Part shown: positions 3,705 through 5,335 of the stretch, in pieces
Layout: every line of letters starts with the position of its first letter
How positions within the stretch are numbered: position 1 is the first letter of the stretch
Source of the DNA: Magallana gigas
Taxonomy: Eukaryota
NCBI RefSeq assembly: GCF_963853765.1
Contig: NC_088855.1
Span: 42,098,001 to 42,162,000 of the forward strand
Reading direction: 5' to 3'
Length of the DNA stretch: 64,000 nucleotides
Made by a program: the position numbers and the translations under genes
Notes under the pieces: model-generated
What the model was told of the DNA's origin: nothing
What the model saw: only the letters and a program-made list of their open reading frames with translations
Databases searched by the model: none

Positions 3705-5335
3705 TCACAAAATAACACAGCAAGCACATTGCGAGTTTTCCTCTACCGGGTTGTCGTATATTCGCATTTCTCCCTTATTGGTCAAAGTGGCTTCTTTCCT
3801 AGAATAGAATGCCAAGGGAAACTCTCAAAGAAAGAGAACCTCTATGGTTTTAGTTTTTAAAGCTTTTAATAAAACATAGCTTATAAAGTGCATTCTTAAA
3901 TTTTAGATGTTGGATTTATATATTTTTGGAATTGTCAAAATTCGTAGACTCTCTTCAGTACCTTTACTAGGTGGCATAATAGAAATCCTTCGTTTTTTCA
4001 ATTTTTATTAAAGAAAATAACCTAGTCCTTAAATTGTAGACAACTGAACACAATCAATGCCCGAACTGACTATGTACTTATTGATCTTTAGAAAAAGATC
4101 CTTTGTTGTCAAAACCAAGGTCTCTTTCTTTTAAAAGAATAATCAAACGATTTCTTTTCTTTATATAATGATATATAAGATGTCTGAATACCTACATATC
4201 TATCCCTTTTACATCGATTTAATTGGTTTATATGTTAACCTTCCCCTTTCCCTTCTAAAACTAAAGCTCTAAAACTTGGCCTTTGCCTAGAAGTAATAAA
4301 GTACTCATTCAACATTTCTGTGTTTCTGGTTATTAGTATTTGTTACCGTAAAATTATTGATACTCACTCCAGTGCTCGTTTTTTTAATGTCTCAAGTTTC
4401 TCTATTTAAAGAAAAACATAAAACTAGTTATTTATTTTTTTTACATAATTGATACAATTCATTTAGAAAAGCTGTAAACTTAAGTGTATATTCTTATAGT
4501 ATAGATATATATACTATAGATAAGGACATTTAACAACATTTATAACGATCTGAAGAGCATGTATATTGACCTGAATTGTTGTTTTAATTATTATTTGATT
4601 AATAATACACACCCATATTCCTGATCCTTGTTACTTTCATGTTTTCATAATCTTCACACTGGGGTATTTTATTGCTCCTATAAAAGTAATAAGAGAACAA
4701 TATTAATTCGATTGGACAGTCCTATTGGAAAACATGAAAGTATGGAAACTTGTTTATAATACTGTGAAAAAAAAATTAGTCCTTACTCTCTACTGCCTGC
4801 AACCTCCTGGCATTTACATTTTATGTTCGGATTGGCTAAAATAATATATGACTAAATTTATTTTTATCTCTGTTAATTAATATGTTTCAGAAACATGATA
4901 AGAAGAGTGAAGTAAATGAATAATGTATCAATTAAATTAAAGAAGATATTTTATGAAAAAATTAAGATTTACAAATTCAGTTTATGTACTGCAACCTGTT
5001 TTTATTCTTGTTTAAAAAAGAAAAGCCTCTTATGTTATATATGTACATAAATGTACATGTAAATGTTAACCTCTTCAAGTTTTACCTTTGAAAATGAAAC
5101 AGTACAGTATACTTCTCTTAATTTTTACCATTTAATTGACATTTCATACATCTCTTGTCTGTCATTAGAATATACCCCCCATGAACACCTCTCGAATTTT
5201 CTGCTTGGCTCGAACTTAGAAAAGAAAGAATTCGTAAGTATAGTGCATTAGGTTGGTTATTTAAATAGAAACTAACAAGAAAGAAATCTAATTTTGAGTA
5301 CCTCTTGTCTTTAGGAACATTTTCATAGATATCAC
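3705..5335 (-). CDS. 3' part of a multi-exon gene for a prenylated (CAAX) protein with several Tyr motifs; putative signalling adaptor
   Basis: Exons 5335-5302, 5214-5129, 4835-4787, 4677-4613, 4401-4368 and 3798-3705 all have AG/GT boundaries and mutually consistent phases. They give GDIYENVPKDKSSSQAENSRGVHGGYILMTDKRCMKCQLNANPNIKCKCQEVAGSRESNKIPQCEDYENMKVTRIRNMEKLETLKKRALEKEATLTNKGEMRIYDNPVEENSQCACCVIL*. The 5' exons were not resolved. Confidence 0.8.

What the first reader, a model, noticed from the sequence alone, without database searches (positions are those of the whole stretch)
3705..5335. Hidden micro-exon gene: lipid-anchored phosphotyrosine adaptor candidate
Six short exons, missed as a gene by the ORF track, splice into one open frame ending CACCVIL*. 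A CAAX box with Leu at X implies geranylgeranylation, and the upstream cysteines could be palmitoylated (established rules). The tail also carries DIYENV, EDYENM, GGYILM and RIYDNP. YxN fits Grb2-type SH2 ligands and YxxM fits PI3K p85 ligands. Known Tyr-motif membrane adaptors such as LAT or FRS2 use a TM helix or myristoylation, so a prenyl anchor would be unusual. The adaptor function is inference.
Basis: partly seen in the sequence, partly recalled or inferred. Interest (0 to 1): 0.75.

Follow-up and report, generated by a model that had tools for sequence, protein, structure and literature searches.

The report
Small lipid-anchored tyrosine-motif protein of oysters
The six tiny exons are real and, with a start codon just upstream, encode a 123-residue oyster-only protein with a conserved lipid-anchor signal and four conserved tyrosine motifs, so it may be a membrane-tethered signalling dock, though this is untested.

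Summary
Observation confirmed. All introns are GT..AG.

One more exon (5698-5544) supplies only the ATG, which has an in-frame stop 12 nt upstream. The whole protein is therefore 123 aa, and there is no hidden GTPase or other N-terminal domain.

The gene is single copy. It is under purifying selection (dN/dS 0.12) and keeps the same exon structure and neighbour in Saccostrea. Orthologues exist in Crassostrea, Magallana, Saccostrea and Ostrea, all annotated "uncharacterized", so it is not truly unannotated. No relative was found outside oysters, and there is no Pfam, PDB or literature match.

All four tyrosines and their motifs are conserved. A CaaX box sits at the exact C-terminus in every species: CVIL, CTIL or CSVS. 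The tail layout CxCCVIL equals that of human FBXL2, where these three cysteines are geranylgeranylated and palmitoylated.

AlphaFold predicts disorder plus one long helix.

Verdict: the gene is real, and a prenyl-palmitoyl anchor is very likely. A phosphotyrosine (SH2-docking) adaptor role is the best reading but remains inference.

The parts
7438..7640 (-). 5' untranslated exon. The donor at 7438 is firm. The upstream end is uncertain: transcripts of a close relative reach 7514-7640.
   Evidence: Joint 5698/7438 seen in X1, X2 and X5. L006-L011 align to 7428-7640 at 94-97% identity.
5544..5698 (-). Exon holding most of the 5'UTR and the start codon. ATG at 5553-5551, coding M-E-D plus the first base of Gly. 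In-frame TGA at 5565-5563. Three upstream ATGs, including a 3-codon uORF ending 2 nt before the main ATG.
   Evidence: Joints; GT..AG introns 5699-7437 and 5336-5543; translation.
5302..5335 (-). 34-nt coding exon carrying motif 1, G-D-I-Y-E-N-V (IYENV is invariant in all orthologues).
5129..5214 (-). 86-nt coding exon with a variable Ser-rich linker, motif 2 (G-Y-I-L-M, YxxM type) and the first Cys pair (C-x2-C). Skipped, together with the next exon, in the 78-aa Magallana gigas isoform P0008.
4787..4835 (-). 49-nt coding exon with NPNIKCKCQ (second Cys pair, C-x-C) and a variable linker. Forms an in-frame 135-nt cassette with the previous exon.
4613..4677 (-). 65-nt coding exon carrying motif 3, D-Y-E-N-M (YxNM, invariant as DYENMKVTR), and the start of the predicted long helix.
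4368..4401 (-). 34-nt coding exon forming the middle of the predicted helix (EKLETLKKRAL).
3705..3798 (-). Coding part of the last exon: end of the helix, motif 4 (R-I-Y-D-N-P, conserved core YDxP), the C-x-C-C-V-I-L tail (CaaX box preceded by two Cys) and the TGA stop.
2913..3704 (-). 3' untranslated region (minimum extent). The true poly(A) site was not determined. Candidate signals: ATTAAA at 3134 and AATAAA at 2857.
   Evidence: X1 contig of 886 nt runs 487 nt beyond 3400 (table 8). The relative's transcripts align down to 3086-3186. Signals listed.

Best explanation
The locus is a real, expressed, single-copy gene with seven coding exons. It encodes a 123-residue cytosolic protein found only in oysters (Ostreidae), mostly disordered with one long helix.

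Inferred mechanism, in order:
1. The C-terminal CaaX cysteine is prenylated. By rule this is geranylgeranyl for CVIL and CTIL, and farnesyl for CSVS in Saccostrea.
2. The one or two cysteines just upstream are then palmitoylated, as in FBXL2, H-Ras and paralemmin. This fixes the C-terminus to the inner leaflet of the plasma membrane.
3. The rest of the chain carries four conserved tyrosine motifs. After phosphorylation by Src/Syk-type kinases they would recruit SH2 proteins:
   - Y-E-N-V and Y-E-N-M for Grb2/Drk-type SH2 domains;
   - Y-[IV]-[LM]-M and Y-E-N-M for PI3K p85-type;
   - Y-D-x-P for Crk/Nck-type.

The protein would thus work like a LAT/NTAL-type scaffold without a transmembrane helix. 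Alternative splicing (the 78-aa isoform) removes the p85-type motif and the Cys cluster.

Shown: the gene structure, expression, conservation and motif presence.
Inferred: lipidation (about 0.85) and phosphotyrosine docking (about 0.45).
For: Gene reality:
- Spliced contigs from 3 runs in 2 studies, plus 6 further Logan transcript contigs of a relative.
- GT..AG at all 7 introns.
- dN/dS of 0.12 against the relative, with dS 0.25.
- The same intron positions in Saccostrea echinata.
- Conserved synteny with the downstream 298-aa gene, 67% identical.
- Single copy in the genome.

Anchor:
- Cys at position -4 in all six orthologue sequences, with aliphatic a1 and a2 residues and 1-2 Cys just upstream.
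- FBXL2's tail C417-R-C419-C420-V-I-L is geranylgeranylated on C420 and palmitoylated on C417 and C419, and this drives plasma-membrane localisation (PMC9988375).
- CVIL and CTIL reporters are fully geranylgeranylated by human GGTase-I (PMC11152559).
- There is no signal peptide or hydrophobic segment in the sequence, so the tail is cytosolic (read directly from the sequence).

Docking:
- The protein has exactly 4 Tyr, all conserved. 3 of the 4 are Y-[ED]-N and 2 of the 4 are YxxM.
- Shuffles reach this in 2.5e-5 of trials.
- The linkers between motifs vary and carry indels, while the motifs are invariant. This is the pattern of a linear-motif scaffold.
- AlphaFold predicts disorder around motifs 1 and 2 and the tail.
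- YxN as a Grb2 ligand and YxxM as a p85 ligand are stated in PMC3342071 and PMC4263166. The YMNM motif of CD28 binds both (PMC2193818 abstract).
- NTAL was itself found by searching for YxN motifs together with an anchor and palmitoylation sites.
- The genome has at least 44 SH2-domain matches.
Against: - There is no evidence here that any of the tyrosines is phosphorylated or that any SH2 domain binds.
- Short motifs are degenerate. For the immunoglobulin tail YxNM motif, only Grb2 and not p85 binds in practice.
- Three of the motifs also fit the YxxPhi sorting consensus.
- The Asn of motif 4 is lost in C. virginica.
- The best-conserved blocks include a four-Cys cluster and a helix that the adaptor model does not explain.
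- No homologue outside oysters exists from which function could be transferred.
- Lipidation is predicted by rule and by analogy, not measured.
- FBXL2 prenylation may also depend on contacts outside the CaaX box.
Confidence: 0.45

Rival explanations
1. The protein is a prenyl-palmitoyl-anchored small regulatory subunit. Its function lies in the conserved Cys cluster (C-x2-C-x9-C-x-C, either a zinc site or extra palmitoylation sites) and the conserved helix, which would bind a specific membrane partner. The tyrosines would be ordinary contact residues and would not be phosphorylated.
For: The Cys cluster and the helix block (DYENMKVTR..NMEK..TL.K) are conserved at least as strongly as the Tyr motifs. 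The helix is the only confidently predicted element, with pLDDT about 80. Paralemmin and G-gamma are precedents for small or helical CaaX proteins acting through protein contacts (general knowledge).
Against: It does not explain why 3 of the 4 Tyr share the Y-[ED]-N context. It also does not explain why motif 1 (IYENV) is invariant inside an otherwise variable, disordered N-terminus. There is no similarity to any known domain. The homodimer test gave no verdict.
Confidence: 0.25
2. The protein is prenyl-anchored and its tyrosine motifs act unphosphorylated as trafficking or autophagy signals. YENV, YILM and YENM would be YxxPhi ligands of clathrin-adaptor mu subunits. The acidic N-terminal DGDIYENV would be an LC3-interacting-region-like motif.
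For: Three of the four motifs fit Y-x-x-[VM] (read from the sequence). Acidic residues precede Tyr 7 and Tyr 70. The predicted membrane tether would place the motifs where adaptor complexes work.
Against: The invariant feature is Asn at +2, which the YxxPhi and LIR rules do not require. Met at +3 is not a canonical LIR residue. Motif 4 (YDxP) fits neither rule. By general knowledge, YxxPhi signals are known in tails of transmembrane cargo, not in lipid-anchored peptides.
Confidence: 0.12
3. The C-terminal cysteines are not lipidated. Together with the internal Cys cluster they form a soluble metal-binding or redox peptide.
For: 8 Cys in 123 residues, in CxxC, CxC and CxCC arrangements.
Against: A Cys lies exactly four residues from the end in all species, and aliphatic residues follow it even though the tail sequences differ (CVIL, CTIL, CSVS). 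CVIL and CTIL are efficient GGTase-I substrates. The 78-aa isoform keeps the tail but drops the internal cluster. The Cys content is far below that of metallothioneins (general knowledge).
Confidence: 0.06
4. The feature is chance stitching of short ORF pieces, or the C-terminal end of a larger Ras-family or other domain protein.
For: None remains. The idea was plausible only before the RNA data, because micro-exons of 34-86 nt are easy to imagine by eye.
Against: All junctions are seen in RNA contigs. There is an in-frame stop 12 nt upstream of the ATG, and the M-E/G-D start is conserved in the orthologues. dN/dS is 0.12. There is no Pfam domain.
Confidence: 0.01

Closest known systems
FBXL2 C-terminal lipid anchor (human F-box/LRR protein 2)
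   Same: The last seven residues have the same layout, Cys-x-Cys-Cys-Val-Ile-Leu. In FBXL2 the CaaX Cys (C420) is geranylgeranylated, and the Cys at -1 and -3 (C419, C417) are palmitoylated in a prenylation-dependent way, which sends the protein to the plasma membrane (PMC9988375).
   Different: FBXL2 is a 423-aa F-box/leucine-rich-repeat ubiquitin-ligase subunit. The oyster protein has no F-box or LRR and shares only the tail. This is a convergent motif, not homology.
Transmembrane adaptor proteins (LAT, NTAL/LAB, LAX, PAG)
   Same: They have no enzymatic domain and are disordered chains. They carry several conserved Tyr motifs, including YxN (Grb2) and YxxM (p85), and palmitoylatable Cys next to the membrane anchor. 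They work as phosphorylation-dependent scaffolds (PMC3342071).
   Different: They are anchored by an N-terminal transmembrane helix, with the motifs C-terminal to it. Here there is no hydrophobic helix and the predicted anchor is a C-terminal prenyl group plus palmitate, so the topology is reversed. There is no sequence similarity, and the oyster protein is much smaller (123 aa).
CD28 YMNM and immunoglobulin tail tyrosine (ITT, YxNM) motifs
   Same: Motif 3 (D-Y-E-N-M) is a YxNM motif. It combines the Grb2 core (YxN) and the p85 core (YxxM), as in CD28 and the membrane-IgG tail.
   Different: Those motifs sit in the tails of transmembrane receptors. For ITT only Grb2 binding was found in practice, so dual binding cannot be assumed.
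Paralemmin (prenyl-palmitoyl-anchored phosphoprotein)
   Same: It has no catalytic domain, is largely helical or disordered, and is anchored to the plasma membrane by a C-terminal CaaX box with nearby palmitoylated Cys (PMC2148134, title and abstract).
   Different: There is no match to the paralemmin family or any other Pfam family. Paralemmin is about 42 kDa, and I know of no reports that it acts as an SH2 dock.
FRS2 / Dok / Gab / IRS docking proteins
   Same: They are membrane-recruited, multi-tyrosine docking platforms for Grb2, p85, Crk and SHP2 (general knowledge).
   Different: They use N-myristoylation or PH/PTB domains for membrane and receptor coupling. None of these is present here, and no receptor-coupling module is recognisable.

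Membership tests
CaaX prenylation substrates | Cys exactly four residues from the C-terminus, followed by two mostly aliphatic residues and a specificity residue X | tested here: met
   C-V-I-L (window, M. gigas, C. virginica, the close relative), C-T-I-L (O. edulis) and C-S-V-S (two Saccostrea species). CVIL and CTIL are complete GGTase-I substrates in a reporter system.
CaaX prenylation substrates | Covalent isoprenoid on the CaaX cysteine | not testable with these tools
   Needs metabolic labelling or mass spectrometry.
Dual prenyl-palmitoyl anchors (FBXL2, H-Ras, paralemmin type) | One or more Cys within a few residues upstream of the CaaX Cys | tested here: met
   Cys at -1 and -3 (Crassostrea, Magallana, Saccostrea) or at -2 (Ostrea). 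The layout is identical to FBXL2 C417/C419/C420.
Transmembrane adaptor proteins (LAT/NTAL/PAG) | Single transmembrane helix with a short ectodomain | tested here: not met
   There is no hydrophobic stretch in the 123-aa sequence. The only predicted helix (68-105) is charged and amphipathic.
Transmembrane adaptor proteins (LAT/NTAL/PAG) | Multiple conserved tyrosine motifs for SH2 proteins in a domain-free chain | tested here: met
   Four conserved motifs and no Pfam domain. Phosphorylation itself was not tested.
Ras-superfamily small GTPases | G domain (P-loop, switch regions) N-terminal to the CaaX tail | tested here: not met
   The ORF is 123 aa with an in-frame stop upstream of the ATG. No Pfam match at E up to 10.
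G-protein gamma subunits | Match to the G-gamma (GGL) domain | tested here: not met
   No Pfam family matched at E up to 1 in any of six members. No PDB sequence match.
Paralemmin family | Match to the paralemmin family profile | tested here: not met
   No Pfam match.
PTB/PH docking proteins (FRS2, Dok, Gab, IRS) | N-terminal PH or PTB domain, or an N-myristoylation signal | tested here: not met
   No Pfam domain. The N-terminus is M-E-D-G in most species. The M-G-D-A of Saccostrea has Asp at position 3 and no Ser/Thr at position 6, which the myristoylation rule disfavours (general knowledge).

The most novel reading that the evidence does not exclude
This would be the first natural SH2-docking scaffold held at the membrane only by a C-terminal prenyl-palmitoyl anchor. 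It would be a transmembrane-less, reversed-topology analogue of LAT/NTAL that arose within oysters. Each tyrosine motif lies on its own micro-exon, and a 135-nt alternatively spliced cassette switches the PI3K-type motif and a Cys cluster on or off.
Probability: 0.35. Interest if true: 0.65.

Novelty: new variant of a known kind. Interest (0 to 1): 0.5.

Why it matters
Membrane-proximal phosphotyrosine scaffolds are known almost only from vertebrate immune and growth-factor signalling, and they use transmembrane helices, myristate or PH/PTB domains. A CaaX-anchored, palmitoylation-tunable scaffold would show a different way to build such a hub. It would also give a small, tractable entry point into tyrosine-kinase signalling in a commercially important mollusc, for example in haemocyte immunity or growth. 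It is further an example of a lineage-restricted gene built almost entirely from short linear motifs, one per micro-exon, which standard ORF-based and domain-based annotation cannot interpret. If the tyrosines are not phosphorylated, the gene is still a clean new case of a small dually lipidated protein of unknown role.

Tried and rejected
- Distant homologues. I ran phmmer of P0003 against 1.84 billion representatives and a profile search of the six-sequence alignment. Only oyster sequences are significant. The long hits P0010-P0014 are tandem-repeat or Ig-repeat proteins whose scores add up from many weak 22-residue matches, so I rejected them as spurious. P0013 and P0015-P0024 are read-through ORFs of C. 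virginica genomic exons.
- Family and structure libraries. Pfam, NCBIfam and PDB sequence searches gave nothing. The ROCK1 coiled-coil match at E 1.9 is noise.
- ESM Atlas. No usable hit.
- Structure. The AlphaFold model has mean pLDDT 53, too low for a meaningful fold search, so none was run.
- Homodimer of residues 60-112. No verdict; this counts neither for nor against pairing.
- Literature. No paper mentions the locus names or the UniProt accession. A keyword search for natural prenylated SH2-docking adaptors found none. This is absence of evidence only.
- Paralemmin tail sequence. I recalled it from memory but could not confirm it in the paper's text, so I do not quote it.
- O. edulis locus. 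Not on record for the exact protein.
- 5' end and poly(A) site. These could not be fixed. The contig breaks at 7463 are not a splice site, since there is no AG there, and probably reflect polymorphism.
- Earlier scan notes on other CaaX proteins of this genome. They concern unrelated genes and were not used.

Full report
**What is at the coordinates.**
The finding lies on the minus strand. The window is AT-rich animal DNA. The sequencing-run search labels it as oyster. The assembly is 564 Mb in 29 contigs, with the window on contig 3.

**Are the exons real?**
I laid contigs of three RNA runs and raw reads of a poly(A) run on 3400-9399. Contigs of X1 and X2 (one study) and X5 (another study, RNA by record) show the same chain of joints.

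There is one more exon upstream, 5698-5544.

- The few raw reads of the poly(A) run over the 3' end all have the first mate on the plus strand. This fits a minus-strand RNA if the library is of the usual stranded type.
- Low-depth unspliced contigs over 3769-4396 indicate some retention of the last intron, or pre-mRNA.
- Six further transcript contigs, each from a different public run, encode a 94%-identical protein of a close relative. They map to the same exons, and they add a 5'UTR exon from 7438 to about 7640. In one contig they also add a possible further exon at 8792-9040.

**The product.**
Splicing gives one open frame. In exon 5698-5544 that frame has a TGA twelve bases before an ATG, which lies ten bases before the exon's end. 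The complete protein therefore has 123 residues.

**Is it a conserved gene?**
- A query built from a stop-free genomic stretch spanning two exons retrieved the spliced 123-aa protein from transcript assemblies.
- Searching with that protein found annotated "uncharacterized" proteins of 118-127 aa in Crassostrea virginica, Saccostrea echinata, S. cucullata and Ostrea edulis. It also found a 78-aa Magallana gigas entry.
- The 78-aa form is the exact product of joining exon 5335-5302 to exon 4677-4613. The junction codon becomes Arg, as observed, so it is an in-frame cassette-skipping isoform.
- In S. echinata the coding exons fall at the same positions in the protein. The next gene downstream is the orthologue of the 298-aa ORF at 1410-2306 of the window, 67% identical.
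- Against the close relative, dN/dS is 0.12 with dS 0.25.
- The genome holds only this one copy.
- The gene is real, expressed and constrained. It is "hidden" only from an ORF track.

**How far does the family reach?**
An exhaustive phmmer search and a profile search found nothing credible outside oysters. The long hits are repeat proteins with summed weak matches. The short ones are genomic read-throughs of the C. virginica exons. Pfam, NCBIfam, PDB sequences and the ESM Atlas gave nothing. No paper mentions the locus identifiers.

**Anatomy of the protein.**
- There are four tyrosines in total, all conserved:
  - I-Y-E-N-V, invariant;
  - G-Y-[IV]-[LM]-M;
  - D-Y-E-N-M-K-V-T-R, invariant;
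  - R-[IL]-Y-D-[NS]-P.
- Between them lie variable linkers with indels.
- Two further blocks are strongly conserved:
  - a Cys cluster, C-x2-C-x9-C-x-C;
  - a basic-acidic helix, residues 68-105, which is the only part AlphaFold predicts with confidence (pLDDT about 80; the rest is below 50).
- Each tyrosine motif sits on its own exon.
- In shuffles of the sequence, three or more YxN occur in 0.2% of trials, two or more YxxM in 1.1%, and both together in 0.0025%. The motifs were chosen after the fact, so these are indicative only.

**The tail.**
Every orthologue ends in a CaaX box at the exact terminus, although the letters differ: CVIL, CTIL and CSVS. Each also has one or two cysteines immediately upstream. 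Conservation of position with change of sequence is what a functional prenylation signal predicts.

- In a humanised yeast reporter, CVIL and CTIL were completely geranylgeranylated by human GGTase-I (PMC11152559).
- By the established rule, X = Ser directs farnesylation. The conserved property is therefore prenylation as such, not geranylgeranylation specifically.
- The layout Cys-x-Cys-Cys-Val-Ile-Leu is the same as the C-terminus of human FBXL2. [quoted passage not shown]
I put it at about 0.85.

**The adaptor idea.**
- YxN as the Grb2 SH2 core and YxxM as the p85 core are stated in the literature read here. The YMNM motif of CD28 binds both (abstract of PMC2193818).
- Motif 3 is of that YxNM type.
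- In motif 4 the invariant residues are Y, D and P, not N. By general knowledge it fits the YxxP/YDxP ligands of Crk, Nck and Abl-type SH2 domains better than Grb2.
- Ile at -1 (motifs 1 and 4) and acidic residues upstream (motifs 1 and 3) suit Src- and Syk-type kinases (general knowledge).
- The genome encodes many SH2 domains, with at least 44 exon-level matches.
- The overall design is a domain-free disordered chain with several conserved Tyr motifs and palmitoylatable Cys beside the anchor. This matches that of LAT, NTAL, LAX and PAG, but the anchor is at the opposite end and is lipid-only.
- NTAL itself was discovered by searching for YxN motifs together with an anchor and palmitoylation sites, so this style of inference has worked before.
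- Against it: nothing here shows phosphorylation. Such motifs over-predict, since the immunoglobulin tail YxNM motif binds only Grb2 in practice. The Cys cluster and the helix remain unexplained.
- I put phosphotyrosine docking at about 0.45. A partner-binding regulatory subunit is at about 0.25, unphosphorylated sorting or LIR-type use of the motifs at about 0.12, and a non-lipidated metal/redox peptide at about 0.06.

**Comparison and novelty.**
The protein is not a member of any known family. It fails the defining features of small GTPases, G-gamma, paralemmin, transmembrane adaptors and PH/PTB docking proteins (see the membership table). It shares a tail motif with FBXL2 by convergence and a working principle with LAT/NTAL-type scaffolds. 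I found no description of a natural SH2-docking scaffold anchored only by a CaaX box. That was a limited keyword search, so this is not proof of absence. I therefore class it as a new variant of a known kind, conditional on the untested function. The gene models themselves already exist in public annotation as uncharacterized proteins.

**Limits.**
- The transcription start and the poly(A) site are not fixed.
- Contig breaks at 7463 are not a splice site.
- The homodimer prediction gave no verdict.

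Noticed in passing
window 5747-6698 (inside the 1739-nt intron 5699-7437): Two adjacent units of about 470 nt (5747-6223 and 6220-6698, 76-77% alike) with long internal inverted arms. One pair is 175 nt at 87% complementarity. The ends resemble TTAAAGGGGCATGGTCAC and its reverse complement. Depth in RNA-run contigs is about 10,000-fold here against 10-100 on the exons, on both strands. This looks like a very high-copy MITE-like element that is transcribed or carried in many transcripts.
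   Followed up: partly
window 5544-5698 (minus strand): The 5'UTR exon holds three upstream ATGs. One is a 3-codon uORF (ATG AAG AAC TAA, 5566-5555) that ends 2 nt before the main ATG, which suggests translational control.
   Followed up: no
window 5302-5335 joined to 4613-4677: A 78-aa Magallana gigas database protein (P0008) corresponds to skipping the two exons 5214-5129 and 4835-4787 (135 nt, in frame). This removes the YxxM motif and the four-Cys cluster. The junction was not among the joints listed for the runs laid here.
   Followed up: partly
window 3769-4396: Unspliced contigs at lower depth (6-13 against 26-35 for the spliced form) cover the last intron, indicating intron retention or pre-mRNA.
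   Followed up: no
window 1410-2306 (minus strand): A single-exon 298-aa ORF immediately downstream is 67% identical to a 302-aa gene in the same position in Saccostrea echinata (L005:17954-18862). It is a conserved, Ser/Lys-rich protein. It was not searched further, and Pfam shows no family for the Saccostrea product in the locus table.
   Followed up: partly
window 5181; 3699-3700: All three contig runs read G for A at 5181, a synonymous His codon change on the minus strand. One run has a 1-nt deletion and a T>G change just after the stop codon. This is ordinary oyster polymorphism.
   Followed up: no
L008:1-119: The first 119 nt of one transcript contig of the relative do not align anywhere in the window. 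This may be an alternative first exon outside the window, or a chimeric contig.
   Followed up: no
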